A DNA stretch of 64,000 bases, from NCBI GenBank assembly GCA_033442325.1, contig JAWQFM010000003.1:408724-472723 (forward strand), read 5' to 3'. Origin of the DNA: Salpingoeca rosetta. Its lineage: Eukaryota; Protista; Choanoflagellata. A program made the position numbers and the translations under genes. Below are positions 1 to 57,737 of this stretch, piece by piece. How positions within the stretch are numbered: position 1 is the first letter of the stretch; each line of letters begins with the position of its first letter. A model generated the notes under the pieces. The model was not told the origin of the DNA, did not search any database, and saw nothing but the letters and a program-made list of their open reading frames with translations.

Positions 1-858
1 AACTGGGCCCTCACCAGCGTCGACTTTGGCGGAATCACAGCCGTGGGGTCGTTTGTGGCCCTCCAAAGCAACTTGGGCGTCACCAGCGTCGACTTTGGCA
101 GCATCACCAGCGTTGGCGAGTACATCGTTTTCACCAACGGCAACGATCTTACCAACATCAACTTTGGCAGCCTCAGCACGGTACAGGGCTACATCAGCTT
201 CGACAACAACGGCGCCCTCACCAGCGTTGATTTCGGCAACATCGCCACTGTGGGTGACTACCTCAGCTTCGACGACAACGACGCCCTCACCAGCGTTGAT
301 TTCGGCAGCATCACCACCGTGTCGGGCGACGTCAGCTTCATGCTTAATGACGCTCTCCCCAGCATCGACTTTGGTAACGTCGCCACCGTGGGCGGCTCCG
401 TTTCCTTCGACCGACACAACTCGCTCGCCAGCGTTGACTTTGGCAGCATCACCAGCGTGCCTGGCGACGTGGGCTTCACTGTCAACATCGCCCTCACCAC
501 TGTCGACTTTGGCAGCGTTGCCACTGTGGGCGGGGACGTCAACTTCTTCTTCAACAATGCCCTCACCAGTCTTGGCTTTGGCAACATCAAGATTGTGGGT
601 GGCTCTGTTTCCTTTGACCGCCACAGCGCCCTCGCCAGCGTTGACTTTGGCGGCATCACGAGCGTGGCTGGAGACATCACCTTCACCTCCAATGCCGCCC
701 TCGCCAGCATCAACTTTGGCAGCGTGGCCACTGTGGGCGGACGCATCACCTTCCAGGACAACGCCGCCCTCACCAGCGTGGATTGCGGCGGCCTTACTGC
801 GGTCTGTGTCAACAACGCCGATGGTATCGCCCTCATCAACTGCCCTGCAGAGTGCTGA
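1..858 (+). CDS. 5'-truncated surface protein: 11 exact 23-aa receptor-L-domain/Ecm33-like LRR repeats plus a Cys-rich C-terminal cap; paralog of 32919-35306
   Basis: Frame 1 is open from base 1 to TGA at 856-858. The 69-bp periodicity is exact from 10 to 768 (consensus LTSVDFGSIxTVGGxxxFxxNxA). Ends LTSVDCGGLTAVCVNNADGIALINCPAEC. No intron in this part. Confidence 0.85.
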   Translation, partial: NWALTSVDFGGITAVGSFVALQSNLGVTSVDFGSITSVGEYIVFTNGNDLTNINFGSLSTVQGYISFDNNGALTSVDFGNIATVGDYLSFDDNDALTSVDFGSITTVSGDVSFMLNDALPSIDFGNVATVGGSVSFDRHNSLASVDFGSITSVPGDVGFTVNIALTTVDFGSVATVGGDVNFFFNNALTSLGFGNIKIVGGSVSFDRHSALASVDFGGITSVAGDITFTSNAALASINFGSVATVGGRITFQDNAALTSVDCGGLTAVCVNNADGIALINCPAEC

Positions 859-1093
859 TCGATAGATTACTTGGGCTTCTGCGATTAGCGGTCCATTTGC
901 TTGTCTTGTGTGTTGTCAGTCTAGCTTCGGTCGAGCGGTCGTAAGCGTGTGTGTGTGTGTGTGTGTGTGTGTGGTTGCGTTCGCGTGTCTGCATGAATTT
1001 GCGTTAGCGTGTCTGCGTAAGTGTTTGCATGTTTCAGGATGTTTCTTCGCTTGGCACGCTTGTGACGTTAGCGAACGTTTGCGTGTGTGTGTG

Positions 1094-1134
<41 letters not shown>

Positions 1135-1369
1135 AACTCACACGTGCCCTTTATGTTTTGAGTAGCTTGAGTTTGGTTGCCTTTCTTTCTCTTTCGTTTG
1201 TCCGTGGGCGTTGGCGATTTGTGACCAATGCACATGCGTGTGTCGTTTCCTTCGTTGTACTGCACTGCACTGATGGCACGTGTGTAACTCAATGGACGGC
1301 AGGCAGGAAAAATGAAAGTGTGCATGCAGACCGGCCGAATCATGGCGGGGAAGACGGAATAACGCGCGC

Positions 1370-1434
<65 letters not shown>

Positions 1435-32918: not shown

Positions 32919-35306
<2,388 letters not shown>

Positions 35307-36434
35307 CGTCCTGTCCTGAGCGTCGCTGAAATCGGCCAACTTGCACGAAGCAGCAGCAGGGGAGGAAGCAGGGAGACAGGCTGTGGGTTGGGAAGGTCCT
35401 CCGCGCTGGAGGTCTATAAATGCCTCCTTAGCCCTTGGGTTGTCGCGCTATGTGACTTTGCATCATGCCAGGCGACCCCATACACAACAAACGAGCTCAA
35501 GTAACCAGCAGCGAGGGCCCTTTCGGAACTCCCGGGGTAGGGGGACTTCGCGAAACTTTGCGAGGCACACGCATGCATGGGTGCTGTGGCTGGTGCTGAA
35601 GACGAATCTGCGAAAGGAACCCTACATTCCAAACCACACACAGAGATGTAGATGCAAACACAGACACAGACACACGCGCCGATTAAGACGCACAGCAGGT
35701 ACAGCAGGGGCAGGCGCGGAAAAGCCACTCGCGCGGCACATGCACGCCACTCACTCCTCGGCTGTTGACATGACACAAAAAAGACGTCACGGAGCAGATC
35801 GCAACCTTAGGAACGTTCAGGACTTTTGGGCCTTCAATCACAGCTCTTCTTCTTAGAACGCCTCTTCCGCGTGAACATGACGATACTGTGGCGAGTTGTT
35901 TTGCAGTCACTGTCACATCACATTAGCCTTACCCAAACACCTTGTTTGTACCTGCACAAGCACCACAGTCCACACGACTTGGCCCAGGGCATAACTCTGC
36001 AAATCTAATTCTTGTCATCATGTCATGTCACATCATAAAGCAACGCAATCCCCTCACCACCCGGTTCCGATCCTCTCTGGCCAGTGCGTGAACACCGGAC
36101 AGACGGTACACAAAGAGCAGAAGACTGAGTTCAAAACACGTCCCTCTCACATTCATACACCCGAACACACATTCTCTAACACACTCACACATTCACTCAC
36201 ACTCACTCACTATTCTCTCACACTCACACTCACTCTCGCATTCACTCTCACACTCACACTCACACTCACACTCACAAGCACACACATGTTATCCCAAAAC
36301 AAAAGACGAGCAAGAGTGTCAACTCAACAACCATCACGCACCCAGCAGCCCAAACAGTAACCCCTTCCCAAGCAACCCCATACCACACACACGCACACAC
36401 ACACACACACACACACGTAAGCGCGGTCGATCAA

Positions 36435-37808: not shown

Positions 37809-40800
37809 AGCATAACCATGCACAAGTACATACGGCCCTGAGTCTTACATTCGCCCGAATCGGCCAACGTCGCCGTACGTGCCCGAAATACCAGTGTCGG
37901 AAGCGTCGAGGGCAATGCCAAAGTAAATAGCGACAATGAACGCTGGCACCACCCAGCACAACACGGACCACAACAGCGCCGAGCGCGCTCGCACAATGGC
38001 CGACACGTCAACAAGGTCGGCGCAGTACTCGCGAGTGCCTGCAAGCACGGCCGCCGTTGCCAGCGCCAGCGTCACCAGGAGCAGGTAGTGGGTCAGCATG
38101 CCGGCGGCAAACGCCAGCGTCTCGTCAACACTCGCACTGCGAACCGTATAGGCTCCGATGATGAAGAGCGAGCCCGCCAGGAACAGAGACACAAACGCCT
38201 GCGCGCGGTAGGAGCTGGCGCGACCGCGGCCCCACACCAGGTGTGTCAGCAGCAGCAGCACGCACCCAGCGAGCACAACGCCCGTGCCAGCCATGACAAC
38301 CAGCGGCACAGGGTCGGTGGTCTCCTCCAAGACGCCGTAGGTGTGTGCCATGTGCGTGCAGGCGCATTCCAAGGTGCCTTGGTCTCCAGCATCAATCGCA
38401 AGCTCGCACCCGTCTGTCAGCCACATGCCCTCGTCCCAGTACGCACACCGCGGCTGGCGCACCTCCCCTGCGCCAGCACTGTCCGGGCTGAACGCAAACG
38501 TGAAGGTGTTTGTGGGGCCAAGTTCCGCCAGGTCCTCATCCGCGACACTCGCGTGCACAAGGACGCCATCAACAGCCCGCGTGCGCGCAGGAACGGGGAA
38601 CGTGTTGTCCTGCGCAGCAAAAGCAATTGCCACCAGCGTGTTGCACTGACTGTCGTCCGTTTCGGTTGTGTTTGTACTGCCGCCAGAGAGCAGCGAGTCC
38701 AGCGGCTGCAGGACATCGCCCAGGAATGGCGGTGCGTGCAGCTCAACCGTGGTCGCTGCAACAGGGAGGGATGACACGCGCCCGCTGAGCGATGCGGGCC
38801 GCGCCCGGGTCACCTCCCACGTCGCCCGTTCGCCAACAAACGAGCGCGTGCAACAACAAGAACAGCCTGCACTGCCGTCAACGGCTTCGTCGCAGTCCAC
38901 CAGCAACGCAGCGCCAAACTTGCGCAGGAGCGTGTCGATCCAGGGCTGCGGCTGCCGCTGCAGCAGCAGCGCATCCACAACGCCCGCAACGGCCTGCAAT
39001 TCAACCACAGTTGCCCTCCTCCTCCTCCTCCTCCTCCACATTCCCTCGTCGTGGCCGGCCTGACGTGGATCAGGTTGTGTATGTGAAACGGCAGATGCAG
39101 CGCCAGCGCCAGCAGCAACATCAGTCGTGCTTGATGGCACCACCTCAGCGCTAGTGCCGACGAAGGCGTCCAAGATGTTGGACAGGGCGGCGTGCATGAA
39201 GAAGAGCGAGTCTGAGCACACGCGATCTGTCTCAGCAAGTCCACTGGCAATGTCAGCGACGCATGTGGTTGAGGAAGCAATGCCGTCGTCAAGCACGACG
39301 TCTGCGTTGGACAGCCCCAGGCAGCCTTCGGGAACCAGCACCACGCACACGGTCCCGTCATCGCCGTTGCGGCTCCCAAGCGTGCCAGCCACCGTGTTGG
39401 CGGCTCCGCCCTGGCTTGACAGCTTGTCTGCAAACACGACAGTGACGCTGGCAAGCCGGCGAGCTCCGAGACGCGCGCCCTGCAGCGTCGTGTTGGATGT
39501 CACCAGCTCCACCGTGAAGTTGCCAATCAGGCCAGCGCCAAGCGCATCCGCAGACGGAATGGTGAGCGCAATGCTGGCCGCTGTCTGCCCCGCCACTAGA
39601 GAAACGCTGCCTTGTATGGACACGCTCAAGGTGTCGAAGCGGCCGCGGAAGGCGCGGTACGAGACTGCAAAGCTGCTGTCCAGGCCTCCCGAGCGCTCAA
39701 CATCGAGCACGGCCTGGTTGTTGCGAACAAGCAGCGCCACACTGCCCTCTGCAAACTGCACAACGCCCAGCGGGTCGTCGCTGGCGGCGACGGTCACCAC
39801 CACGCTGTTGGCATTGCGCGTCAGCACAACCGGTGTGTCAACAGCGTCCACGCAGGGCAGACTGCTGCGGGAAGGACACGCAAGCACGCGCACCAGCTCC
39901 ACGACAAACACCTCCTCAAACTCAGGGATGGCGTCGTCGAGAATGTCAAAAGACAGCGTGCTTGTGTTCTGGCCAGGCGCAAACGCAACCACTCCACTTA
40001 CCGGCGACACATCATCACCAACCGCATCAGTGGCGCCTGCTCCTGCTGTTGCTGTTGCTGCTGCTGCTGCTGTACTTGCGATGGGCGTTGTCGATGCACC
40101 ATTCGTGACGCTGCCTGCCACACGGATCGCCCAGGACACCAGCAGGTATCCCGATGCACCGGGAACATATGACCCGCCAGACCGCACGAGGGTCAGGGAA
40201 GCGCGTGAAGATGCCGCTGCTGTCGCCGCTGTGGACGTTGTTGATGCGGACTCGAAAACGCGAAGCCCACTCGACGCCAGCGCCGCCTCAAACCCAACCG
40301 TGCCGTCAGCAACCTCTAGAGGAATGGCAAATGCTGTGCCGCGGGCACTGTCATCAATGGCCACGCCCGAGTTGTCCGAGGACACGGTGGCGCTGGCGAC
40401 ACGCACAAGCACGGTCCGGCCCGCGACCAGGGCCACGCTGTCGCTGATATCAAGCTGGAGGCTCTGACGGGCCTGACCCTCGCTCAACGTGACAGAGAAG
40501 ACGCAGTCACTGCTGATGGTGGCGACGCCATTGGCTAGGGGACAGCTGCTCAGGTCCGCCATCTCCTGTGCTGTGGGTACGGCGGTGGCTGTGGCAGTGG
40601 TGCTGTTGCTTGTGGGTCGCGCGTTCAAATCGACCACGCAGGTGACGACGACTTGATCCACGGTTCCAAACGAGCGCAGTACGTCAAAGACGACGAAACG
40701 GGGCGCCCGCTGGGCAACCTGCACCACTTTTGCAGGGGCGCTCATACCAACAATGCCGTATGGGTCATCGCTTGGGGGCACAACAATGGTGACGCTGCGC

Positions 40801-43551
40801 GCTGTGTCATCGATGCTGCCCTGGTCCGCCACGTCCGCCACAAGCCGCGTGAGGGACACAACAAACACCTCTTGCAGCTCAGGTGTGCTGTCACCAAGCA
40901 CCTGCAGCGTGAGCACAGCGCTCTGCTGACCCTGCACAAACTCCAGCATGCCAGATGGCGGGCTGATGTCCGTTGACACGTCCTGGGATTGGGTTGTTGC
41001 TGCCGCAGAGGAGGCCGTCACCTGCCAGAACACAGACACGGCTCCGAATAGGCCAGCGCTGCGCTGGACGGTGAGCTGCACCGGCGTGGTGGCTGCAGCA
41101 GTGCCCGCGCTGGGCTCCTCAACCACGATGCTCCCTGCACCCGCAAACGCAAACCTGCCAGCGGCATCGTCACTGGCTGCCAGGACCACGCGTGTGGTCG
41201 TGCGGCCCAGCACGGCCCCGCCAAACACCTGTGTGAGGCGAACAATGAACGACTCGCTCTGCTCTGGCTCGTCGTCATCGGTCAGGGCAACAGAAAAGGA
41301 GGCCACCACCTCTCGCGACGCCAGCGTCACCTCGCCCGACTGCACGGGGAAGTCTACCCCAGCCTGTGCTGCTGCTGTTGTTGCCGCTGCTGGTGAGGAG
41401 GATGTGCCCCGATCTTCCTCCTCCACCGTCCACAGCACGGTTATGTCCCCGTGCGTGGCCGTGTCGCGCAGCAGGGAGAGGGTCACTGTGCCCTGGCTCT
41501 CCTGCGCGCTCACCACGTCGCTGTCCAGCGACACGCGCCCGTACGTGAACACGCCCTCCGTCACAGAGAGTGCCGCCGTGCTGCGAGTAGCGTCAATACC
41601 GGGGACAATCCCAGCAGCGTATGCACTTGCAGATGTGGTGCCATCTGCCAGCGACACGCCCATCAGCTCCGCGCCGAGCGTGCCGGAAACCTCCAGTCTC
41701 AGCGCCTCTGGTATGGCTGCCTGCACCCGCACCGTTGTCTGTGCGGACGCGAATGTACCCGTGCCCGTGTGTTCCCACGTCGTGGCACTCACGTCCAAGA
41801 ACAGGCTTGCCACGGGGGCCGCGTACACCAGACGGTACGAAAACGTCAGCGGTCCAAACGTGCCGCCAGCGCGGTGCACGTCCAGCACAGCCGTGCGCGT
41901 TTGTGTGTCCAGGTCTGTGACGATTGCGATGCTGCCGTCAGACACTTCGTCCCTGTTGTTGGTACTGGAGACGTTTGCTCGCTCAAGGTAGAGGGTGCCC
42001 GCAGGGTTGTCGTTGGCAACCACGACGAGGGCAACAAGCTCAGTGGCAAGGCTGACCCACGTCGCGTTGTGGAGTGAGAAGGTCAGCAGGCACACTTCGT
42101 CCCGCTCAGGAAGCTCATCAGAGGGGATGTTGAGCACAATGTCCATGCTTTCTGAGACCGACACTTGGCCTTGCCGGGGCTCTGCACAGGGCACAGCGCT
42201 GGTGGGTGTACCTGAAGCAGCTGTCCCTGTTGCCTCCTCAACGCTGCTGAGTCGCCAGCGAAGTGTCGCAGGCAAGGCCGCGGATGCCGTTGTCGGCGCA
42301 AAGCGTCCATGCTCACGTTGCAGCCTCAGCGCGAGAGCTTCGCCTTCGTTGGCAATGACAACACCTGCCACACCACCGACCGTGACATCGCTTCCAGCGG
42401 CCACCTCGGCCAGATCTGGGCTGGCGAGCCGCACAACCCCTCCAGCAGCGCTCTCCGGCACCAGCGCCGTTGCCTCGAAGGTGTCGTACGTTTGCACCAC
42501 CACGGGAGCACCAGTCGAGGGCGAGGGTACCGTTGCTTGCACTTGTGTCAATGTGATGCGCAGTCGCGAATCGGTCACCAGCTTCGCATCCAGCGAAAGT
42601 GGCAGCCGCAAGAGCGCAGCGTGCTCTCCAGCCCGCAGAATTGTCACCGGATCTGCCTGCGCAATGTCGAGCAAGCCCTCCACAACGAGGAAGCTGTTGT
42701 CGCCGCCATCGCTGCTGTATGCCGCGGAAATGTGGGCAACAATGTCACCAAATGTTCCGCCTGCTCGGGTCACGTTGATGGTGACAAGGCGGCTGACTAG
42801 ATGACGATCAGATGTTGTGACACTGTTGTTTGCCTCATTCGATGTCGTAGCCAGCGTCACCTCCGCGGTGGAGGCAACGTGAAGGGCGCCAAATGGCTCG
42901 CCACTCGCTGCGATGGTAACGCGGACCTGGCTGTTGTTGTGCAGCAATGTAACGCCAGGGTTGCTCAGCTGCACGAGCGAAACGACAAACGTCTCTTCCA
43001 GCTCGTCTTCACCGTCGGCAACGCAGAGCACGCGAATACGTGTTGATACCACACGTTGTCCCTGGGTTGAGTTGAGCTGAACGGTCGAGAGTGATACGTC
43101 TGTCGAGATGTCCGCGCGTGTGGCTCCAGCCCCAATTGGGGACAGTGCCAGCTCTGCAATCAAATCATCATAGGCATCCGGCAGCCGACGCACAGCCAGG
43201 GTAATGACTTCGCCTTCCACGCATGTGATGGCACGCTCGCCGCCCTCCGTTTCCAAGAACACGCCGCCGCGCGGGTTGTCGCTTCCAGCGATGACCAAGT
43301 CAACATGCCCTCGCTCTGCGTCAATGTGTGGAGCAGATGCGACACTGGCAACGGCGGCATCGTCGCTGCTCTCTTGTGCGGCAGGCTCGGGATGGGAGGA
43401 CAGTGTGATGCGCACCTGCGCTGCCACCTCTGCAATGTCGTCGGGGTCAATGGTTAGCACAAGCGTCTGGGTGCCTTCGCCCTCATCAAATGTCAGCATG
43501 CCGGCCATTTCGCGCAGGACATGCTGCAGGGCGCTTGCACCACCACCACCA

Positions 43552-43588
<37 letters not shown>

Positions 43589-46500
43589 TTGTGGACGCGT
43601 TGGCTACGCTACCAACAACATCTGCCCGCCAGAACACAGTCGCCGCTGCCATCACAGGGCCCGTGCGAACAACCTTCAACAAAACCCGCACAGGATCTGC
43701 ATCCTCTGGCTCTGCGTACATGTGCTGCATGGCGAGGGTCTCTTGGGAGAAGGAGAACGTGCCGTAGTACCGGTCGTTGGCAGGCGTGGCAATGCGCAAG
43801 GACCGCCGACCTGCATCGCTGTCTGCACGTGCACCATCCTCCACAGCCACAATGGTGAGGGCAAGGGCCTCCTCCCCCTCGGGCTGCTGATCGTTGAGGA
43901 ACACCAGCTCAACTTCAGCCTCCGTCTGCCCATCGGTGAACTCAATCACCGCCCGTGGCAGAAACGCGTCACCCTCAACATGCACATTCTCAAGCAGGGC
44001 AATGTCAACGCTGGTACTTCCTGCATCACCCAGCATGTGAAGGAGCCAGGGCTCGGTGTGTAGCCCCGGTGCAGCTTCAAGCGTGGATGGCAATGCCGCG
44101 CCGTTCACCCAGGCCGAGTAGCCCAGATACGAGGTGTCGATGGCAGTGACGTGGTCACCCACACTTGCCTGTGCCACGGCTACAAAGCGACTGGCCTGCA
44201 CATCATACACGTAAGCCACAACGTGGTGCGCGCTGATGTTGTTGTTGCTGCTACTGCTGTTGTTGTTGTTGCTGTTGTTGCTGCTTGCATCTTCGTCTTG
44301 TTCGATGAGCGCAAGCAGTACTGGTGAAAACGACACACTGCTGCTGCCACTGCTACTGACATGATTGAGCGAAGATACACCACGTACACCAAAGGATGGT
44401 AGGCCAAGTTGGTCCACAACTGTGTCTGCGGAGAGAACAACAATGTGTACGGGCACCGTATCAGCAGCACCACCGTCTCGTGTCGAAAGCACCTCAACCA
44501 CCACTGGCGGCATATCAGGGTCACGCTTCACGCCGATGAGAAGCGCCCTCGTGTAGTCCTCCTGAGCATCTGCCCCACCAGCAAACACGTGTGTCCATTG
44601 TGCCACGCCGGCCAGGGCCATACTCACGTCCACAGGTTCACCGCTCTCGCTGGCAGCGGCATCAGCTGTCACCTGCAACTGCTCGAGGGTGCCTTGCGGG
44701 GTCACGACAAACGCGGCCGCCGTGCCGCTGTCCGCCGACGCAACAAGCAGCAGCGGAGACAACACCGTGGTCACGACCCCAACTTCTTCTGCTGTTGCTT
44801 CTGTTCCATCTGCACCAACACTGTGGCGGACAATGCCGGATGTAGCGTGGAAGCTCGTGGGGAAGACGCCCTCAACAACACTGGTCTCTGCCAGCGCGCC
44901 ATCCTCCGTGACGCGCAGCAGCTTGATCTGCCCCGTCAACTGCCCTTCGTCGTTGTAGTCGCTGCCAACCGCAACATACGCCGTGCTGTTGTTCACCGCA
45001 ATAAACGCCGTGCACGTTGGATTGACCGTGCTGAGGGTGGCGGTCGGCACCATAAACTCGCCGTCCAGCATGTACAGGGTGGACAGGGACGCCGAGGGGA
45101 TGATGCTGTTGCGCAGACTGAAGACGGGCAGAAAAACAAACACGTTTTGTCCAACACGCCCCGTGGCCAACGACCGCACGTCTCGGTTGCTCAGCACCTG
45201 CTGGGCTTGTGCCGGTGCAACTGTTGTGGCACCAATCTCGTCAGCATTGTTGTTGTTGTTGTTGTTGGTCTGCATCGCATAGAGAACAGTCTGCTGACGT
45301 GTCGCCACGACCGCAAACAGGGTGTCGCCTTCAGCAAACGTCACCACGGCTTCTGGCTCTGCCTGCATCTGCACCTGAGGCCACTCGGCCACAGAACGCA
45401 CCCAATCTGACAACACGCCTGTGCTGGAAGTAGCTGTTTCTGCGGACGGCGATGTCACTGTCGAAAACAGTGACGATGCCGCTGCATCTGTTTCTTCTGC
45501 TGTGTCTGCGATTGCCTGCTCAGCTGTGCGTGCAAGTGAGAAGGCGAATTGGCCGGCCGCGCCGGAAGCGCCTGTGGCCGTCTCAAAGTCGAGAGCAACA
45601 TGTACAGTCACGTTGCCAAAGGCCCCGCCCTGTGCCATATCACGCACAAGCAGTGCCGAGTACACACCCGCAGCCTCGTTGACCCTGACCGTGCCATCGC
45701 CAGCAACCACATCGCCATTCATGTGCACAATTCGGAACACACCACGCGCGTTGTCGTTCTCGGCAATCACGATGCGCGTCTCATCCAAGGACCCAACCTC
45801 TGGTGGCAGGGTGTAGCTCTGTACAGCTGGTGGCACCATCTCAGCCACGGAAGTGCCATCAGCCAAAGACAGGATCTCCAGCTGTGTGATGCGCACGTGG
45901 AACGCCTCTGCCAGCTCGGGATTCGTGTCATCAATCACGTCAATGTTCACGCCGACGGCGTCGCTTGTGGCCGGCAAATCCACGAACGTGGTGAGAAGCA
46001 CAAAGTCTTCCACGGGAACTGCGCGCTGACGCGCAGGGTCTTGCATGCTGCTGATGGCTTCCAAGTGCACGCGAACGGTGCCCAGGCTGCCGGAGCCTGG
46101 CGCGCGCACAACCGACAAGCGTTGTCCCTGGCGCAGTGCTGAGTCACCCTCCGTCGTGTCAACCTCAACCTGGGACAGCTCATACACGCCAAGGGCACTG
46201 TCGCTGCTCTGCACGTTCAGCAACACTTCCTGTCTTGCGCTGGGATCAAACACGCCGTTCTCAGACACAGACGTCAAGCGTAGCACAGCCTGCTGAGCCA
46301 GCTCTGGCACTGTGTCGGAGACCAGCTCCAGGTGAATCGGCAGCCGCCGTGTTTGCGCACCAAAGAAGGTCAGTTGGCCCGTGTGTGGTGGCAGAAACTG
46401 TGCCCGGGCTTCTCCCGTCAGCGCCCAGGTGACAACAAGTTCGCCACTCGTCGCAACGTCAAGTCGCTGAACCCACACTGTTGCGTTGCTGGACAGCCCG

Positions 46501-49500
46501 CTTGTGCCCACAGCTCCATCATCGCCATTGCCAGCCACCACCGTGCCGTCATCGGCTGCGTCTTCACTCAACAGGATGGCTGCGCCAGCCGCTTCAAATG
46601 CAACGCGATCGTCGTCGGGACGGGCGACAACCGCCACCTCGCTCTGTGCTGTATCCAGCTCCCCACCGTTGTATGTCCGCAAGAGCCTCAGCGCGTATGT
46701 GTTGATGACATTGGGAACACCGTCATCCAGCAGCTGCACATCAAAGGCTGCTTGCATCACCCCAACGCCCAGCGTCACGTTGCCCTGGGCGTGGTCAAAT
46801 CGTACTGCTGGTGCATCTGCCTCGATGCCGCTGCCAGCATGCACAATCTCCCATTCAACAAGAATCTCTTTAAGGGCGGCCACGGAACGTGCGACGCTGA
46901 TGTTGAACACATTGCCTTCTGCAGCGCTGATGCGCCTGGCACTGGTGCTGTTGGCCGCGCCGGCAACACTGACCAGCCCGCCCGGGTTGTCGCTCTCCTC
47001 AACTTCCAATCGGACCGTGCTGTTCCTGCCGCTGGTCACGCTGGCCACGCCGCTGGCGTTCACAAGGGACACGTCAAACTGCTGCACAATCTCGGGCACA
47101 GCATCATCCACCACAAACACATCAAAGCTCACGCGCATCTCACCCTCCGCAAACACAACGCAGCCCTCTGCAGGCGACAGCTGCTGCGCTACCGAGACAG
47201 AAGCTCCTGTGGCGTGCGTTGTTGAGTTGTCTGTCACCGTTGACATGGTATCCGTGCTCGCGTCTGACGTGGCTTGCTCCGCAGCAACCGCCATCGCCAT
47301 CCAGCACACCGTGGATGTGCCCTTGGTGCTGACAGACCGCTGCACATCAAACTGCACGCGCTGCCCTTCCGCGCCAGCCACAACAGCGACACTGCCTTGA
47401 CTTGGTGACGTCATTGCTGGCGGTGCCGCCGCTGCTGCTGAGAGAGAGAACAGGCCATTGACGTCATCGTTGGCAGCAACACCCACAATCGTGGGCGTTG
47501 CAACACATTCTGGGCCAGCACCTGGGTGGGTGTACCCTTGTGGCGAGACAAGCTCGCATTGCACGATGTCCACCACAGCCAGCTCCAACCCTTCGGGCAT
47601 GGTGTCATCTGCCAGCGGCAACACGACGAGCGCTTCCTCTGCGCCAGACGGAATCCGTACAGTAGCTGTCTGCGTGCTGCTGTTTTGCAAATCGGCCAGG
47701 GAGATGCTGCTGATACTGTCAGTCACTGTGGGGAACGCGTGCAGGTGAATGTCGAGAACGAACAGCAGTCCAAGATCCGTGGTTGCGCCCGTACTTGTGT
47801 TTGCACTTGTCACAGTGTCTTCCTCTGTAGCTGACACGACGAGGTGACCCGCCGCATCTTGGTCGTACAACAGGCACAGGTCACGTGTGCTGCCAGCAAG
47901 CACGAAGGCAGCGCACTCAAAGTCAGCCTGCGTCAAACATGCACGCGCGCACGCGACAGCGTCTTCATCGCCATCACGGGCAGGCACCATGGCCGTGAAG
48001 TTTAGCAGCGCTTCGGTGGTGGCTTGAGCTGCCCCAGACGTGGCGTTGTTCTTGCTGCTGCAGCCGCTTGTCATGGCGGTCGTGGAGTTTGTGGCTGTGG
48101 TTGTGGTGTTTGATTCTGGGCCCATGCTAGCCGTGTCCAAGCAGATTGGAATGGTGATGGGGGACTGCGACATGAACCAGTCAAGTGGGTCGAGGGGGCG
48201 AATGCGAACCGTCACATCCACCTCGCCCAGCAGCCCCAAACTGCGGACAACGCGCAGCGCCCCACCGGCAGGGCTGTCCTCACGCACAACCTGGTTCTCG
48301 GGAATGAAGAAGCGCCCAAAGTCGTATGCGTTATCGGATGGCAATACTGTCACGTTCGCTGTCTGTGCGCTTGCACGCACGCCCGCCATGGCGCCGGCCG
48401 TGGTGGACACCACATTCAGGGTGAGCTCAAACCACTCCGCACCCTCCGGCACCTTGTCGCCGACCACTCGCGCCGTGACGTTAACCTGCCTCTCCCCAGG
48501 CTGGAAGTGCACAATCACTGAGCCGTTGCTGACCGGCACAACGGAAGCAGTCGACGTCGATGGTGAGAGCACCACTTCGTGCGATGACGTTGTGCCGTCC
48601 GCCATGGACAGCACCAGTTCAACGCTCTCCGCAGCGCCCTGATCGCGCGTCACAGTCACAGTCACCACCTCGTCCTCCGCGGCCACGTACACGTGTTGGC
48701 TTGCGTGCTGGGTGGACTTCAAGTGCCACAGCGACAGGCCAAAGAGGCCCGCGGGAAAGTCGTCTTGAGCAACAGCAATGTCGATGACACCCATGTTGTC
48801 GACGCCTTGGACCTGTGCCATGCGTGCATCCATTGTCGTGGCGGGGAGGCTAAGCCCAAGCCGCACGGTGTAGTTGAAGTTTGCAGCCGTGTCATCACGA
48901 ACTTGCACGGCCACGTCGCTTTCGCGCTGGCCTTCTTCAAACACCACCCACGTGGGTGAAATACGGAGGTTGTTTGTGTCGGCCAGCGCAAACGTGGCCG
49001 TGTCCAGGACGCGAGCGTCGTGCTGCACTCCAACAAAGACGATGCTTGCATTCACGGCTACCAGCGCCCCACCCGTGCGGACGATATGCATGGTTGCGTT
49101 GTCGCCCTCGCTCAACTCCAGACGTGACTGCGCATACTGCACAGTGCCACCAGGAAAGTCGCTGTGGGCAATGCGCAATTGCGCTGTGTCTTGTTGGCCG
49201 AGCACGCCCTTGCTGCTGGGCGCAATGCTAAGCACCAAGGTGGCGCTCTCCGCGAGCTCGGGCACAGCGTCATCGGTGATTTCCACATCAAAGTGCAGCG
49301 TGGGCTGCGTTTCCTCGCCGTGCACGCCGGAAGCAAACACCAGTGTTCCGTTTAGCCCCGTCGACACCGCAAAGTCGCCTGCAGACGCAAGCCCCGCACT
49401 CCCCATGTTCGTGTCGTTGTGTGATGTTGCACGGCTGGATGTGTCAATGGCCCACATGACCATCGTGTCCTCAAACGTCCCGGCAAACCGGGTCACACCA

Positions 49501-52500
49501 ATGCGCGCCACTTGCCCTTCCTCAGTATGGACAATGGACGAGGCAAACGCGAACCGCCCATAAGGGTCGTCGCTCTCCTCAATCACCACCACGCGCTTCT
49601 CGGTGTTGCCGGTGCTGTCCGTGGCAATGCTCAGTGCACCACCAAGCGCGTCGCTGGCAGCAACTGCTATATCGTCATTGCCACTGCTGCTGCTGCCTGC
49701 GTCAGTGCTCAACACCAGCCGCGCGTTGCTCAGGTGCACAAACACCTGCTCCTGCACTTCAGGCAACTCGTCGTCGAGAATGTCAAGCGTAATCACCTTC
49801 TCCGCCTCACCTGCAGCAAAGTCGAGTGTCGTGTGCAGACCAACATAGTCCAGACCCTCCACGCTGGCATTGGCCGTGCTGTACGTCTCCCGAACATACA
49901 CCGTCCACTCGCTCAGGACATCAGCGATGTCGGAAATGCCCACAGTGGGTTCACGTTGAAGAGCAAAGAGCGCACAAGTGAAAGTGGAGGCGGCACCATT
50001 GCTGCCTCTGACATTGCGTGTATCTGTCGCGTTGAGATCAGCGGCATTACTGGTGGTGCTGTTGCTGGTGGTGTTGGGTTGAAACCAGCCAAACGCCACA
50101 CAATCGACGGTGGCGTTGGTGATGCACATGCTTGCACACTCCTCCACTTTGCTTGCAGCTGACCAGCTTGCAACGGTGACGTCGCTGACGTCCATGGTGC
50201 TGGTGCTATTCCCGCTGCTGTCGCCTGTGGTTGCGCTGGCGTTCTGAGTCTGTGCAAGCATTTCGGCCACATCAACCATTGCCATTGGCAAAGAAAAGAG
50301 TGACATCAACTCGTCTGCCGTGTCCACATCAACGAGAACACGACCCTCAGTGCCACGCAGCCGCTGCACGCGGATGGTCGCCTGCGACGACTCCCCATCA
50401 CCGCCCTCCGCCACCCGTGAGCGAAGCACCGCAAAGGAGAACAGGCCGTACGCGTTGTCGTTGGCTGCAATGCCAATGTCCAGTGATGCTGCGGCGCCTT
50501 GCGCCACAGAGATCTCGGCACCGCGCGCAGAGAGAATGAGCAGCGAAAACGCCTCGGGCAGTTCAGGTACCGTGTCATCGACGACAGTAAAGGCGAGGCT
50601 TGCTGTGGTTTGCCCAATTTCCAGCGTCGTCGTGCCGGCCGCAGGGACAATATCGCCAGTGTCCGGCTCAATCGCCCACTGCACCACGACGCGATCGTAG
50701 GCGGACGGTCCGCGGCGCAGGGTCGCCGAGAATGCAGCGCCCTCCTTCAGCGACAGCAGAGTGGGCGGTGCCGGTGCAAACGCCACAGCACACTCGGGGC
50801 AAGAGCGCAGCACGAATGTCGCCTCGTCACGCACAACGCGGCTTTCACCCAGGCTGTTAGTGACGTTGACAATGTACACGGTCAGCCCTTGCCCGTCAGG
50901 GATGTCTGCCACGACAGAGGCACTGAGAGGCACCACCACTGTGGCGCGGTCGCTGTCAGCAGCATCGCCATCAGTTACCTCACCAAACCACCTTGCTGGA
51001 AACACCACGGTGGCACGGAAGCGGCTCAGGTCGTGTGTGGTACTGCGCTGTGCTGCTGTGGCGCGAGCAGCAAGCTGCACGACGACGTCACCGTAGTATC
51101 CGACGCTCCTCTGTACGGTCACAGTCACGTTTCCTTCTCCGCGCAGAACATCCACTGCACCCAGCGGCTGTACGAGCTCAAGCACGCCATATGCGTCGTC
51201 GCTGGAGTCCACTACCACCGCAGCATCCAGCAGCACAGTGCCCGCACCAACGACCGTCGCGCCTTCACTGCCACGCCGCGCAGGCAGGAGGGGGATGAGG
51301 GATCCAGTACCGGAAACTGCTGTACTGGATGCTGTTGTGGCTGTCAGGGACAGCGTGCCTTCCTTTGGCAGCTCAGGTACCGTGTTGTCCACCGGGGCAA
51401 GCGTGAACCCTGCCTCTGTCTGGCCGTGGGCAAGCACCACTTGCTGTGGAAACGTCAAGTCGTCCATGCGCAAGGTGGCGCTTTCTCCCTGCTTGATTCT
51501 GGAGATTTGCTCCGAGGCCGCGCCCAAGGAGACGTTCAGGTACACGGCACCAAATGAGCCAGCAACACGCTTCACAGACAGCACGGCAACGGTGTTGCCT
51601 GTCTCAGCCAGCGTAACCATGGCTCTTGTCCCGTTGGAGCTGCTATCAACACTGATTTGTGCTTCACCGCTGTTGATGCGCGTCGTATTGACACTCGTGC
51701 CATTGCTGTGGATGGTTGTGTTGACGTACTCCCACAGCAGGACGCCAAAGCGCGCCTCTTGGGGTGGCGTGACGAGAGTGGTCACGCGGGGACCAAGGCG
51801 CGGCGAGACCCCCTGTGGTGTTGTCACTACCGTGCCATCCTGCTGCTCCACAGAGATGACGGTTACGCAGAAGCGTGTGTTCTCTGCGAGCGACAATGAA
51901 AACGTGTCGGGAATGGGCACATTCGCTGATGCGACTGCCTGCCCTTCCGCAAATGGCACTTGCACAACCTCCTGCAGACCTTCCTCCGCCACGGAAACAC
52001 AGCCGGCGTTGTTGTGGTCAATGTGCAGCCGCACGCGTGCGCGAATGTCGGAGAAGAGCCCTCCAGAGCGTGCCAGTGTAAAGGACAGGTTGCGGTGCGT
52101 TGCAGATGCGATCACGCCGGCAGCAGCAAGGTCAACCACGCCATGGGGGTCGTCATTGGGAAGAATGGTCACAATGGCCGTCGATGCGTCCTGGGCAATG
52201 CTTGACGCACCAGGCGTCTCGCCCAAGGTCACCGCTGCCACTTGCTCAAGCTCCGGCACGCTGTCGTCCACAACGCGAAGCGTCAGCGTGGATGTGCTTT
52301 GGCCATCCTCAAACCACACGCTGCCATTGTGCGGTTGCAAAGAGGCTGCAGCGCCGCTGCCATCGGTGCTGACCGTGAACGGGACCGCCAGGCGCCCAAG
52401 CGTGCTCACTGTGCGCTGCACCGACAAGGTGATGGTGCGGTTTGTCTCTGCCACCGTATTCAGCCCAAGGACGAGCGACGCCGGTGCGAAGCGAAAGAGC

Positions 52501-55500
52501 CCACGCGCGTTGTCGTTTTCCGGGATGCGCACCAGCGTGTGGGTCGGGGCACCTGCTACCATAGCGTCCAGCTGCAGGTCCTCTGCTGCTAGCGTGCCCG
52601 CCCCGCTCACGACAGAGCCCAGCTTCACAACAAAGCCTTCGTCCAGCTCGGGCTGGCCGTCGGCTGCGATGGCAAACGCAACCTGCGCCACTTGCTGTCC
52701 GGGTGCAAACACCACCGTCGCAAGCAGCTCATCAACGGAGACCGGCACCAGAGACACAGCGCTGTTGCTGCTGCTGGTGGTGGTGCTGGCGGCGGCGGTG
52801 CCAGAGTTGTTATTGATACTGTCTGATGCTGTCGCTGAGAGGGAAAAGTCGCTGCCGGCAAGCGTGGGAAGAACGCGTGTTGGATTCAGGGTGCTTCTAT
52901 AGGCAGCGTCGCCGCCCAGTGGCGTGGCGATGTGCTGCTCCGTGCCGTTCACCAGCACATGCAAAGTGACCCGCATGCTGCCAAACAGGCCGCCGCGCCT
53001 GACGATGCCAACCTGGGCACGCTGACCCTCGCTCGACACAACAAGCGAGGAGAGGAGCTCGGGGCGCCCGTACGGGTCGTCGTTCTCCAGGATGGCCACC
53101 TGCAGCACGTCGCCGGCCATGATTGCTGGCTCAGCGGGCTGCGTGGCGGTCGTCTCAAGCAGCACGGGCGAGCCCAGCACAACCCACACCACTTCGGTCA
53201 CCTCTGGCACAGCGTCCTCAAGCACGCTTAGCACAAGTTGCTTGTGCGTTTCGCCGTCCTCGAAGATGACGCTGCTTGTGCTCAACAAAACGTCGCCACC
53301 GGGACCGGTGTCGGCAAAAGCTGAGGCCGTTTGGTTGTAATCATAGTTTGCATTCGGCGCTGCTGCGCCATTGTCAGGGTCACCGCCATCGTCGCTGCTT
53401 TGGTTCTGCAGCTCCCGCGCCCCAATGAGCTCCACAGGAACCTGCACAGTGCCCTCGGTGCCAAACGTGCGCGTCACGGAGATGGTGACGGCTGCCGGCT
53501 CTGACACCGCCACCGCACGGATAACGCGCAGGGTAAAGGTGCCTTGCTCCACGGAAGGAACAACGGTGCCATCAGCCGACAGGTGGACGTCAAATGGAGC
53601 CGAGGTGTCGTCGAACGCGACATGAGCACCGCTTGCACCGGTGATGTTGGCGCTGAAGAGCCCGTGTGGGAAGTCGCTTGCCTCCAGGGTGATGCTGGCC
53701 AGGATGCGCTGTGCATCGAAGCGCGCGCCACCGCTCAGCTCCGTCAGCGCAAGCACAAACTCGTCCTGGTACTCTGGGATTGTGTCGTCCTCGATGCTGA
53801 TGATGATGGGAACAGAGGCGACGCCTTGCTCAAGCACCACCACCCCAGATGTCGGGTGCAGTGCGGTGATGGTGCTAGTTAGGGCAGACCGGAGCTCCCA
53901 GCCAACCGTTGTGCGGCCCACTGTACCTTGGGCGCGGTGCACAAACACCGTCATGCTGCCGTCTTCCTCCTGAACCCGCAGCGTGAGCGAGTCGTTGCGA
54001 ACGCCAACCACCCCATACGGGTCGTCGCTGGCGAGGACTGTCAGTGCAACGGTGCCATTTGTGATGCCACTATCGCTGCTGCCGTCGTCACCGCCACTGC
54101 CATTCGCAGCATACTCCGCGTCGGTTTTGAGCCTCGCACCACCGGTGGCGTTGATCAGCCGCAGTGTAAAGGCAGCGTCCAGCTCGGGAAGCGTATCGTC
54201 AGCGACGGAAATTGCAATGGATGCTTCCCGCACACCATCCCCAAAAGTAACCACGCCACTGCTACGCACAAAGGCTGGTGGCGGTGCTGTCGTTGTCATT
54301 GTTGTTGTTGTTGGTGGTGGTGCTGGAGACTGCGGGACAATCTCCCACTGGGCCTGCACAATGCCAAAGGCGCCGCGTGTGCGAACAACGGGCACCAGCA
54401 GCGTGCTCGGAGCAATCGCCCCTGTACCTTCCTCGCCGGGCGATGGGGGTTCTGCAAGCGTAACAGAGGCACCAAAGTCGGGTGCGATGGCCAGAACACC
54501 ATTTGCATCGTCACTCGCAGGCACGACAATTGTCTTGCGCGTGCCTTGGGGCGCAAAGGCCGACTGGTTTGTGTAGCCGCCAGAGATGCTGGTGAGCGTG
54601 AGGATGTGCGTGCTCTCCAGCTCCGGCACATCGTCGGGGACGATGGGGACAACCAGTGTGGCGTTGATGGCCGCTTCTTCAAACGTCAGGGTGCCGTTGA
54701 GGGTGGAGAAGCTCGCGGCGTCACTCGTGGCGAGGTGCCACGCAACCTCCACTGCACCAAACGCACCCGCATTGCGTTTGACGACAATGCCGGCGGGTTG
54801 CTCGCCCGCTTCGGGCTCACGCACGACCACAAGCGCTTGGTCCGGCTGCTCAAAGGAGAAGACGCCCGATGCCATGTCGTTGGCGGGAATCACGACCGTG
54901 CAAACGGTCTGGTTGCCGAGGGCGGTGGCGTGGGTGAGGTCCTGATTGATGGGCCGCACGCTCTCGAGCACAAGCTGCAGTGCCTCGTCCGCCTCGGGCT
55001 CGTCGTCGTGCAGGACGGTGACGCTGACCGCCTGTGATGCCTGACCCTCCGTGAAGAGGAGTGCAGAGACGGCGTCAATGTAGTCCACCCCACGCGAGGC
55101 GGCCGCAATGCCAGGTGCGCCCGCCAGGATGCGGTAGCGCACAAGCACGCTGCCCCTTGTTGTCGTGCGCGTGATGGCGACGGACGCCGTGCGGAAGAGA
55201 TCGTTCGACGGCTCAGGCACGGAGACATACGCGGCGCCCAGCTCAAACACGCCCAGGGGCGCGTCACTCGCTTCAATGGCAAAGTCGATTGCGAATGCGC
55301 TGGGGTGCGCCGTGGAGATGACGGCGCCGTTGGTGGCGTTGCCGAGCGTCAGCGTGAACACCTGCCTCAGCTCCGGGATGTCATCGTCAGTCGCAGCGAT
55401 GACAATGTGCCCGGTCGTCTGTACGTCCTCAAACACGAGCGTGCCGCGCCAGCTGTCCAGGTTGTCCGCAGGGGACCCAAATTCCACCACGTCCGGGGAT

Positions 55501-57305: not shown

Positions 57306-57367
57306 TTTGTTCTGGGCTCGTACGGGGCGCACCTGCAACCCCTTTATGGCGTACGTGTGCGAGAGAA

Positions 57368-57403
<36 letters not shown>

Positions 57404-57737
57404 AGTGTGTGTGTGGATGTGCGTGTGTGTGGGTGTGGATGTGTGTGTGTGGATGTGCGTGAGTGTGTGTGTGGATGTGTGTGTGTGTGGATGTGCGTGA
57501 GTGTGTGTGTGGATGTGCGTGAGTGTGTGTGAGAGCGATGAACAACAAGTTGACTTGAAGGCGGCGTGCAAAGCAAACAAACTAATCTCTGTGAGACACC
57601 AGCAAACCAACACACACAGAGAGACGCACGCATATCCTTCACCTTTTCAGGACCGAGGGCCTGACAATGGCACCGCAAGTAGCCTCGACTGGTGATGGCG
57701 AGGTCGCAAAGGGCGGACGTTGAAACCTTGTGCCACT

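What the first reader, a model, noticed from the sequence alone, without database searches (positions are those of the whole stretch)
1..858. Modular 69-bp repeat receptor with a constant scaffold and a hypervariable strand (VLR-like design)
Seen: 11 perfectly phased 23-aa units with a near-invariant LTSVDFGxIxxVxG scaffold and one highly variable patch (SFVALQS, EYIVFTN, GYISFDN, DYLSFDD, GDVSFML, GSVSFDR, GDVGFTV, GDVNFFF, GDITFTS, GRITFQD). Established: in LRR and L-domain solenoids such a strand forms the ligand-binding face, and lamprey VLRs diversify by shuffling modules of this kind. Inference: a family of variable recognition proteins (prey, pathogen or self/non-self) diversified by repeat exchange. 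This is an analogy of design, not a claim of homology to VLRs.
Basis: partly seen in the sequence, partly recalled or inferred. Interest (0 to 1): 0.75.

Follow-up and report, generated by a model that had tools for sequence, protein, structure and literature searches.

The report
Choanoflagellate repeat-rod surface receptor gene
This is the tail end of an ordinary, complete gene for a cell-surface protein of the choanoflagellate Salpingoeca rosetta that displays a long leucine-rich-repeat-type rod with one variable face. It is one of at least 46 such genes, and nothing indicates lamprey-style shuffling of repeat cassettes.

Summary
Window 1-858 encodes 11 gap-free 23-residue units plus a four-cysteine cap. 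They form the C-terminus of a 1069-residue single-exon gene that starts 2352 bases before the window.

- **Architecture:** Tyr/Asn-rich cytoplasmic tail, one membrane helix (type II), Thr-rich stalk, Cys cap, about 34 coils, Cys cap.
- **Fold:** a high-confidence AlphaFold model gives a three-stranded solenoid. It is closest to LRR proteins, including a solved BspA-type (Pfam LRR_5) protein.
- **Variable face:** variability sits at unit positions 15, 17, 19, 20 and 22, on the longest strand. HMM alignments place that strand on the xLxLxxN strand of lamprey VLR-A and on the GxLxIxxN strand of an EGFR-family L domain. The design analogy is therefore fair, but it applies to LRR proteins in general.
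- **Exchange:** not supported. Every copy sits in a long open frame, there are no cassette arrays, and no other DNA in the genome is more than about 75% identical. Similar units are about 30 times more often in the same gene. pN/pS at variable positions is about 0.7-1.0, not above 1. The one hint of exchange is an old tract of about 170 bases shared with the neighbouring paralog.

This scan has already noted the family elsewhere in this genome, as TIR/SH2 "inverted Toll-like" receptors. This member has neither domain.

The parts
1..858 (+). Last 285 codons plus stop of a 1069-codon single-exon gene. The whole CDS is G000:C3:406372-409581 = L032:2372-5581, starting 2352 bases left of the window.
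   Evidence: Translation. The exact 1069-aa product is a called gene in NCBI GCA_000188695.1 scaffold GL832959.1. The upstream neighbour is a divergent STK36-like kinase, so no further 5' exon is expected.
10..768 (+). Eleven in-phase 23-residue (69-nt) solenoid units. Consensus: L-T-S-V-D-F-G-x-I-x-x-V-G-G-x-h-x-F-x-x-N-x-A.
   Evidence: AlphaFold model (pLDDT 97): three strands per unit at positions 3-5, 11-12 and 16-19.
769..855 (+). Terminal unit fused to the C-terminal cap with four conserved Cys (window residues 262, 269, 281, 285). The protein ends here.
   Evidence: C269 and C285 are invariant, and C262 and C281 are at least 90% conserved, in 22 paralog C-termini.
355..768 (+). Old tandem duplication of a three-unit block (355-561 and 562-768).
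   Evidence: TRF period 207, 78% matches. The unit pairs are 72%, 80% and 72% identical at DNA level, against a mean of 59%.
682..855 (+). Last 58 codons: less diverged from the neighbouring paralog at synonymous sites than the rest of the gene. Candidate old gene-conversion tract.
   Evidence: pS is 0.31 here, against 0.70 in the N-cap region and 0.62 in the tail (Fisher p = 2e-5 and 9e-4). There is no similarity downstream of the stop.
32919..35339 (-). Nearest paralog: same architecture, 806-residue frame. The N-cap region and the last 58 residues are conserved. The middle repeat array is shorter and not colinear.

Best explanation
Window 1-858 is the C-terminal end of a germline-encoded, single-exon gene of Salpingoeca rosetta for a type II single-pass membrane protein.

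**Shown**
- The protein has a 141-residue Tyr/Asn-rich N-terminal tail, one hydrophobic helix preceded by basic residues, and a stretch of about 80 residues that is 56% Ser/Thr.
- A six-Cys N-cap (including a CCC motif) follows, then about 34 coils of 22-25 residues, then a four-Cys C-cap at the very C-terminus.
- The coils form a three-stranded LRR-clan solenoid, lying between BspA-type LRR_5 and the receptor L domain.
- Sequence variation among coils, and among at least 46 paralogs, concentrates on the outward residues of the longest strand (positions 15, 17, 19) and the turn after it (20, 22).

**Inferred**
- The rod (about 34 x 4.8 A, roughly 160 A) is held above the membrane on a glycosylated stalk.
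- It binds extracellular ligands along the variable face. Candidates are bacterial surfaces or cues, matrix, or other cells.
- The tail passes the signal on through phosphotyrosine docking. It has nine Tyr, including YENM and YANP motifs, and a juxtamembrane K-x-[YF]-x-[LVM]-E motif shared with paralogs. Sister genes carry TIR and SH2-like domains at the same place.
- The family diversifies in the germline by gene duplication, tandem duplication of unit blocks, substitution on the exposed strand and rare conversion between paralogs. It does not use somatic or cassette-based assembly.
For: - **Gene model:**
- **Topology and stalk:**
- **Fold:** Pfam LRR_5 at 46.3 bits (cutoff 27.7, E 4.8e-12) on the 285 residues. 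Recep_L_domain at 25.1 bits (cutoff 21.8) on the whole protein. AlphaFold pLDDT 97, pTM 0.93. Structural matches: RPP1 LRR Z 20.4; InlJ Z 18.4; LRR_5 protein 4fs7 Z 17.6 with rmsd 3.3 A over 270 residues.
- **Strand equivalence:** the family profile hits the LET-23 L domain at E 2.7e-6 and VLR-A at 4.6e-5, with the alignments shown.
- **Variability:** the same entropy pattern appears in 22 units of this gene and in 240 units of 11 family genes.
- **Family size and intact frames:**
- **Signalling paralogs:** PTSG_02597, which is the C4:550k paralog, has TIR at 21.5 bits (cutoff 21.3) and an SH2-like stretch at 18.9 bits (below the cutoff of 21). A EukProt transcript shows an SH2-like stretch (read by eye; no Pfam SH2 hit), a membrane helix, a CCC cap, units and an NCPxxC cap.
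- **Germline mode of change:** three-unit block duplication here. Identical units 132 residues apart, and 69-, 132- and 327-nt periods, in the C9 paralog. Intragenic excess of similar units.
Against: - No ligand, expression, localisation or phosphorylation data exist here.
- The tail is low-complexity, and its Tyr motifs could be chance.
- Variable-face positions evolve at about the neutral rate. That fits relaxed constraint as well as ligand-driven change.
- Between this gene and its neighbour, the last two colinear units differ more at scaffold positions than on the variable face.
- LRR_5 was not listed when the whole protein was scanned, and Foldseek found no match at E <= 0.001.
Confidence: 0.6

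Rival explanations
1. Passive adhesin or glycocalyx component. The rod is a structural or sticky surface fibre, like many bacterial and trichomonad BspA-like proteins. The variable strand is simply the least constrained surface, and the tail has no signalling role.
For: pN/pS at variable positions is about 0.7-1.0, compatible with no constraint. This member has no recognisable signalling domain. The closest outside relatives are bacterial surface proteins carrying RTX, PKD, FN3 and T9SS-tail domains.
Against: Paralogs with the same caps and membrane anchor carry TIR and SH2-like cytoplasmic domains. A juxtamembrane motif is conserved among paralog tails. In the two colinear units shared with the neighbouring paralog, most variable-face residues are kept.
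Confidence: 0.3
2. VLR-like combinatorial system. Modules are exchanged among genes, or copied from donor cassettes, to generate a variable receptor repertoire, possibly somatically.
For: The neighbouring paralogs have constant ends and a non-colinear middle array. Their last 58 codons show reduced synonymous divergence. Variability lies on the strand that aligns with the VLR hypervariable strand.
Against: The open frame is complete and identical in an independent public assembly. All matches but one lie in long stop-free frames, and there are no cassette clusters. No DNA elsewhere exceeds about 75% identity. Similar modules are overwhelmingly intragenic. There is no nonsynonymous excess. Conserved ends with a variable middle are expected for any tandem array evolving by unequal crossing-over.
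Confidence: 0.03
3. Bacterial-type BspA/L-domain repeat acquired by horizontal transfer and then expanded, as proposed for trichomonad BspA genes. This concerns origin and is compatible with either function above.
For: Most outside hits at 24-38% identity are metagenomic or bacterial proteins with Recep_L_domain or LRR_5 plus bacterial surface domains.
Against: No close bacterial donor was found; the best hit is 31% identical. The caps, stalk and type II anchor are shared with another eukaryotic transcript. The profile also matches animal L domains and LRRs, so vertical descent within the LRR clan is equally possible. No tree was built.
Confidence: 0.15

Closest known systems
BspA-like / TpLRR surface proteins (Pfam LRR_5), such as the 911-gene TvBspA family of Trichomonas vaginalis (PMC2843621) and the Bacteroides protein of PDB 4fs7
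   Same: Both have a 23-residue period. The Pfam LRR_5 match is above threshold and the structure superposes at Z 17.6. Both are large paralog families with varying repeat number, low-complexity linkers to a membrane helix, and cytoplasmic tails.
   Different: TvBspA proteins with a membrane helix have the repeats at the N-terminus outside the cell (PMC2843621). Here the repeats are C-terminal and the anchor is type II. Positions 7 and 21 are Gly and Asn here; the TpLRR consensus has Pro and Cys there (from memory). Cys-rich N- and C-caps are present here.
Receptor L domain (Pfam PF01030) of EGFR/ErbB and insulin/IGF-1 receptors
   Same: Both are three-sided solenoids with a GxhxhxxN strand. 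The family profile's best PDB sequence hit is the LET-23 L domain at E 2.7e-6, and ErbB2, IGF-1R and the insulin receptor are also hit. Several paralogs exceed the Pfam threshold, up to 53.5 bits. From my own knowledge, this strand contributes to the ligand-binding sheet of the insulin-receptor L1 domain.
   Different: L domains have about 5-6 turns flanked by furin-like Cys-rich regions in type I receptor kinases. Here there are about 34 turns, no furin-like region, no kinase, and the opposite membrane orientation.
Lamprey variable lymphocyte receptors (PMC3900441, PMC11160967)
   Same: Both have capped LRR modules on a Thr-rich stalk. Variation lies on the strand that HMMER aligns with the VLR xLxLxxN strand. 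VLR-A is the third-best PDB sequence hit of the family profile.
   Different: VLR genes are incomplete in the germline and are assembled from flanking donor cassettes by a gene-conversion-like process involving cytosine deaminases (PMC3900441). Here the gene is complete, no cassettes exist and there is no recent exchange.
The 'inverted Toll-like' TIR/SH2 type II receptors noted earlier in this scan in the same genome (for example PTSG_02597)
   Same: They share the membrane anchor ending in AVPV, the CCC N-cap, the 23-residue units and the NCPxxC C-cap.
   Different: This member has no TIR or SH2 domain, only a low-complexity Tyr/Asn-rich tail.

Membership tests
BspA-type LRR (Pfam LRR_5 / TpLRR) | Match to the Pfam LRR_5 model above its gathering score | tested here: met
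   46.3 bits against a cutoff of 27.7, E 4.8e-12, three stretches, on window residues 1-285. The C9 paralog scores 110 bits. LRR_5 was not listed when the whole 1069-residue protein was scanned.
BspA-type LRR (Pfam LRR_5 / TpLRR) | Repeat period of 23 residues forming an LRR-type solenoid like solved LRR_5 proteins | tested here: met
   22 gap-free 23-residue units. The model superposes on 4fs7 at Z 17.6, rmsd 3.3 A, 270 residues, 18% identity, and on 4fdw at Z 16.4.
BspA-type LRR (Pfam LRR_5 / TpLRR) | TpLRR consensus residues (Pro after the first strand, Cys before the next unit) | tested here: inconclusive
   Positions 7 and 21 are Gly (19 of 22) and Asn (18 of 22). The TpLRR consensus is recalled from memory and was not scored with the PROSITE profile.
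Receptor L domain (Pfam PF01030) | Match to the Pfam model above its gathering score | tested here: met
   The whole protein scores 25.1 bits against a cutoff of 21.8, but no single stretch is significant. Paralogs score 30-53.5 bits. The family profile matches the LET-23 L domain at E 2.7e-6.
Receptor L domain (Pfam PF01030) | Short L domain (about 5-6 turns) flanked by furin-like Cys-rich regions in a type I receptor | tested here: not met
   About 34 turns, no furin-like or kinase domain in Pfam, and type II orientation.
Variable lymphocyte receptor system | Incomplete germline gene flanked by arrays of donor LRR cassettes | tested here: not met
   The 1069-codon frame is complete and identical in a public assembly. 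136 family matches lie in about 46 long frames, and only one place has stops. No DNA copy exceeds about 75% identity.
Variable lymphocyte receptor system | Variation concentrated on the concave-strand x positions of xLxLxxN | tested here: met
   The highest entropy is at positions 15, 17, 19, 20 and 22. HMMER aligns h16-x-h18-x-x-N21 to the VLR-A LxLxxN strand.
Variable lymphocyte receptor system | Somatic assembly by a deaminase-dependent gene-conversion-like process | not testable with these tools
   This needs long reads from clones or single cells. Deaminase genes were not searched for.
S. rosetta type II TIR/SH2 solenoid receptors (earlier notes of this scan) | Type II anchor, CCC N-cap, 23-residue units, NCPxxC C-cap | tested here: met
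   The caps and anchor align with PTSG_02597 and other paralogs.
S. rosetta type II TIR/SH2 solenoid receptors (earlier notes of this scan) | Cytoplasmic TIR and/or SH2 domain | tested here: not met
   Pfam finds neither in the 1069-residue product. The 1.2-kb upstream spacer ends at a divergent kinase gene. The public gene call has the same start.

The most novel reading that the evidence does not exclude
[quoted passage not shown] It would read ligands on the same strand that VLRs and EGFR/insulin-receptor L domains use, and signal through phosphotyrosine, SH2 and TIR modules in reverse membrane order. Arrays would be remodelled by block duplication and occasional conversion between paralogs.
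Probability: 0.2. Interest if true: 0.7.

Novelty: new variant of a known kind. Interest (0 to 1): 0.4.

Why it matters
Choanoflagellates respond to specific bacterial molecules and eat bacteria, yet few of their surface receptors are known. This gene belongs to a large, unstudied family of type II membrane proteins that carry an LRR/L-domain-type rod. Some members have TIR or SH2-like domains inside the cell. That makes the family a concrete candidate set for such receptors, and S. rosetta is a species in which gene knock-outs are feasible. The specific claim that made the finding attractive, VLR-like shuffling of modules, is not borne out. What remains is a normal multigene family with the usual LRR pattern of a fixed scaffold and a variable face.

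Tried and rejected
- **Foldseek against the PDB:** nothing at E <= 0.001, probably because the rod is straighter than horseshoe LRRs. The wide VIA-align search was needed.
- **Single-sequence phmmer against the PDB:** only 4fs7, at E 0.27. The family profile was needed.
- **dN/dS over all 231 unit pairs:** saturated. Variable positions gave pN 0.66 and pS 0.53, and pS is probably depressed by codon bias. I do not trust the apparent ratio of 1.8.
- **Three-unit duplicate alone:** 1.24 from 4.5 synonymous changes, which is uninformative.
- **Pfam hits to DUF2292, CobW_C_DAAF9, PhoQ_Sensor and PPARgamma_N:** short repeat-driven matches with no significant stretch. Rejected.
- **Possible upstream TIR/SH2 exon:** rejected.
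- **Absence of the protein:** I first read this as absence from public protein sets. One search showed the exact product is a called gene in GCA_000188695.1.
- **Fetching all paralog loci:** The unit statistics therefore cover 27 of about 46 loci.
- **Not done:** a maximum-likelihood tree of modules (69 nt carries too little signal; nearest-neighbour counts were used instead), the large representative-protein search, and a search for AID/APOBEC-type deaminases.

Full report
**What is in the sequence**

Frame 1 of window 1-858 is open up to a TGA at 856-858. It consists of 11 consecutive 23-residue units without any indel (nt 10-768). A last unit follows that runs into a four-cysteine cap ending the protein (nt 769-855). 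Tandem Repeats Finder sees period 69, and a higher-order period of 207 at 388-776.

The frame runs off the left edge. With the upstream DNA from the same contig, the open frame is 1105 codons, and the first ATG gives 1069 residues. That exact 1069-residue product is a called gene in NCBI assembly GCA_000188695.1, scaffold GL832959.1, with no Pfam family on record. A paralog in this genome is identical to the named protein PTSG_02597 of Salpingoeca rosetta, so the organism is S. rosetta. Upstream lies a divergent STK36-like kinase gene about 1.2 kb away. Downstream lies an alpha-galactosidase gene on the other strand. The gene is therefore a single exon with no hidden 5' domain.

**Architecture**

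- Residues 1-141 are polar and low-complexity, rich in Asn, and contain nine Tyr.
- One strongly hydrophobic helix starts at residue 142. It is preceded by GWKFK and ends in AVAVPV. There is no N-terminal signal peptide, which points to a type II orientation.
- A stretch of about 80 residues that is 56% Ser/Thr follows.
- Then comes a cap with six Cys, including a CCC motif, and about 34 coils.
- The first five or so coils are a divergent class, followed by an irregular linker. After that there are 22 units in perfect phase from residue 535.
- The C-terminal cap closes the protein. Two of its four Cys are invariant and two are at least 90% conserved in 22 paralog C-termini.

**Fold**

- Pfam LRR_5 (BspA type) matches the 285 window residues at 46.3 bits, against a cutoff of 27.7.
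- The whole protein passes the Receptor L domain threshold only marginally. Several paralogs pass it clearly.
- AlphaFold2, given an alignment of 22 paralog C-termini, returns pLDDT 97 and pTM 0.93. Each unit has three short strands, at positions 3-5, 11-12 and 16-19.
- Foldseek found nothing convincing.
- The exhaustive VIA-align search ranks LRR proteins first: RPP1 at Z 20.4, InlJ at Z 18.4, and the LRR_5 protein 4fs7 at Z 17.6 with rmsd 3.3 A over 270 residues. Generic right-handed beta-helices follow at Z 13-16.
- A profile of the family searched against PDB sequences hits the L domain of C. elegans LET-23/EGFR best (E 2.7e-6). Lamprey VLR-A follows (4.6e-5), then LRIG1, GPIb-alpha, Toll, ErbB2, IGF-1R and the insulin receptor.
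- In the printed alignments, our G-x15-h16-x17-h18-x19-x20-N21 lies on LxLxxN of VLR-A and on GsLxIxxN of LET-23.

**Where the variation is**

In the 22 in-phase units, entropy is about 3 bits at positions 15, 17, 19, 20 and 22. It is below 1 bit at positions 1, 3, 7, 12 and 21. The same profile appears in 240 units from 11 family genes.

The patch is therefore an alternating strand whose outward residues, plus the following turn, vary. Identical positions stack every coil in a solenoid, so these residues form one continuous stripe. This follows from the geometry of the model; I had no coordinates to measure it.

The other exposed positions (2, 3, 5, 8, 10, 11, 13, 14) are 85% small polar residues or Gly/Ala. 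The variable positions carry 30% charged and 12% aromatic residues.

**Is there exchange or diversifying selection?**

*Family size.* The family is large. There are 136 matches in about 46 separate open frames of 250-2367 codons, on at least 25 contigs. Nearly all are free of stops, and most end in the same cap. Only C4:951610-952155 has stops. There is no array of orphan cassettes.

*DNA similarity.* Nothing in the 55-Mb genome other than the gene itself is more than about 75% identical to this stretch. The one exception is a single 54-nt match at 81%.

*Unit similarity.* Units within the gene average 59% nucleotide identity, with a maximum of 80%. The closest ones reflect an old three-unit block duplication. 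Across 477 units of 27 paralog frames, pairs of at least 75% identity number 37 of 5,911 possible intragenic pairs. They number 21 of 107,615 possible intergenic pairs. Most of the intergenic pairs involve near-consensus units. Arrays therefore grow by internal duplication. The C9 paralog even has identical units 132 residues apart, with 69-, 132- and 327-nt periods.

*dN/dS.* Over all unit pairs the comparison is saturated. In 15 and 36 independent, less diverged unit pairs, pN/pS is 0.71 and 1.02 at the variable positions. It is 0.43-0.53 at scaffold positions, and neither variable-position value differs from 1. This means relaxed or mixed constraint. It is not a demonstrated excess of nonsynonymous change. 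Choosing pairs by identity biases this test, and paralogous units are not orthologs.

*One hint of exchange.* The neighbouring paralog (window 32919-35339, minus strand) shares conserved ends with this gene, but its middle array is shorter and not colinear. Synonymous divergence is saturated in the tail and N-cap regions (pS 0.62 and 0.70). It is only 0.31 in the last 58 codons (p = 2e-5 and 9e-4), and there is no similarity past the stop codon. An old conversion of about 170 bases is the simplest reading. Selection on codon usage is the alternative.

In the two colinear units before the cap, the two genes differ more at scaffold positions than on the variable face. This suggests each unit's face residues are kept, not randomised.

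**Family context**

- PTSG_02597, the C4:550k paralog, has upstream exons with a TIR domain (21.5 bits against a cutoff of 21.3) and an SH2-like stretch (18.9 bits, below the cutoff of 21).
- A EukProt transcript has an SH2-like stretch (read by eye; no Pfam SH2 hit), a membrane helix, a CCC cap, units and an NCPxxC cap. The family therefore appears not to be confined to this genome.
- Paralog tails share a juxtamembrane K-x-[YF]-x-[LVM]-E motif.
- Other outside relatives, at 24-38% identity, are mostly bacterial or metagenomic surface proteins. They combine Recep_L_domain or LRR_5 with RTX, PKD, FN3 or T9SS-tail domains.
- Richter et al. 2018 (PMC6040629) describe choanoflagellate TLRs, Kinase TLRs and soluble TIR-SH2 proteins, but not this architecture. 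Two literature searches found no paper on it.
- Earlier notes of this scan describe the TIR/SH2 members elsewhere in the genome as 'inverted Toll-like' receptors. I confirmed the shared ectodomain, and the TIR/SH2-like content of one member.

**Verdict**

It goes too far in suggesting VLR-like module shuffling.

The most likely function is a germline-encoded surface receptor or adhesin that binds ligands along the variable stripe and may signal through its tyrosine-rich tail. That part is inference.

Noticed in passing
L033 (G000:C9:1036501-1045500), frame L033:1917-7355 (-): This 1813-codon paralog carries 23-residue units that are 100% identical at DNA level 132 residues apart, and 91-94% identical third copies. 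TRF reports periods of 69, 132 and 327 nt. This indicates recent tandem block duplication in the irregular linker region of the ectodomain. Its frame starts with a 'LQCR' motif, like the exon after the SH2 domain of PTSG_02597, so it probably has upstream TIR/SH2 exons.
   Followed up: partly
protein residues 108-125 of the gene (upstream of the window; L032:2693-2746) and the equivalent places in paralogs: A juxtamembrane cytoplasmic motif, roughly P-x-x-[LI]-K-x-[YF]-x-[LVM]-E, sits about 25 residues before the membrane helix. It is shared by at least five paralogs with otherwise unrelated tails.
   Followed up: no
window 682-855 versus window 32922-33095 (-): The last 58 codons of the two neighbouring, convergently oriented paralogs have half the synonymous divergence of the rest of the genes. 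The cap itself is 91% identical in DNA. This is a possible old gene-conversion tract that stops at the stop codon.
   Followed up: partly
window 947-1432 and throughout the window: Dense (GT)n/(CA)n microsatellites fill the 3' flank and nearly every intergenic or intronic stretch; TRF returned 153 rows. Long (CAA)n, (GTT)n and (TGT)n tracts also occur.
   Followed up: no
window 37845-57548 (-): A single open frame of 6567 codons. Earlier scan notes call it an ADGRV1/VLGR1-like adhesion receptor. It was not examined here.
   Followed up: no
G000:C4:951610-952155 (-) (locus L043): This is the only family match interrupted by stop codons (one TGA, one TAA) and lying in a short 249-codon frame. 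It may be a pseudogene fragment or an intron-containing member.
   Followed up: no
P0001 (metagenomic protein, 1840 aa): The best outside hit (E 2e-73) looks like a bacterial RTX/cadherin-like surface protein. Its 23-residue units are nearly identical to one another, so its array is homogenised, in contrast to the diverged units of the choanoflagellate genes.
   Followed up: no
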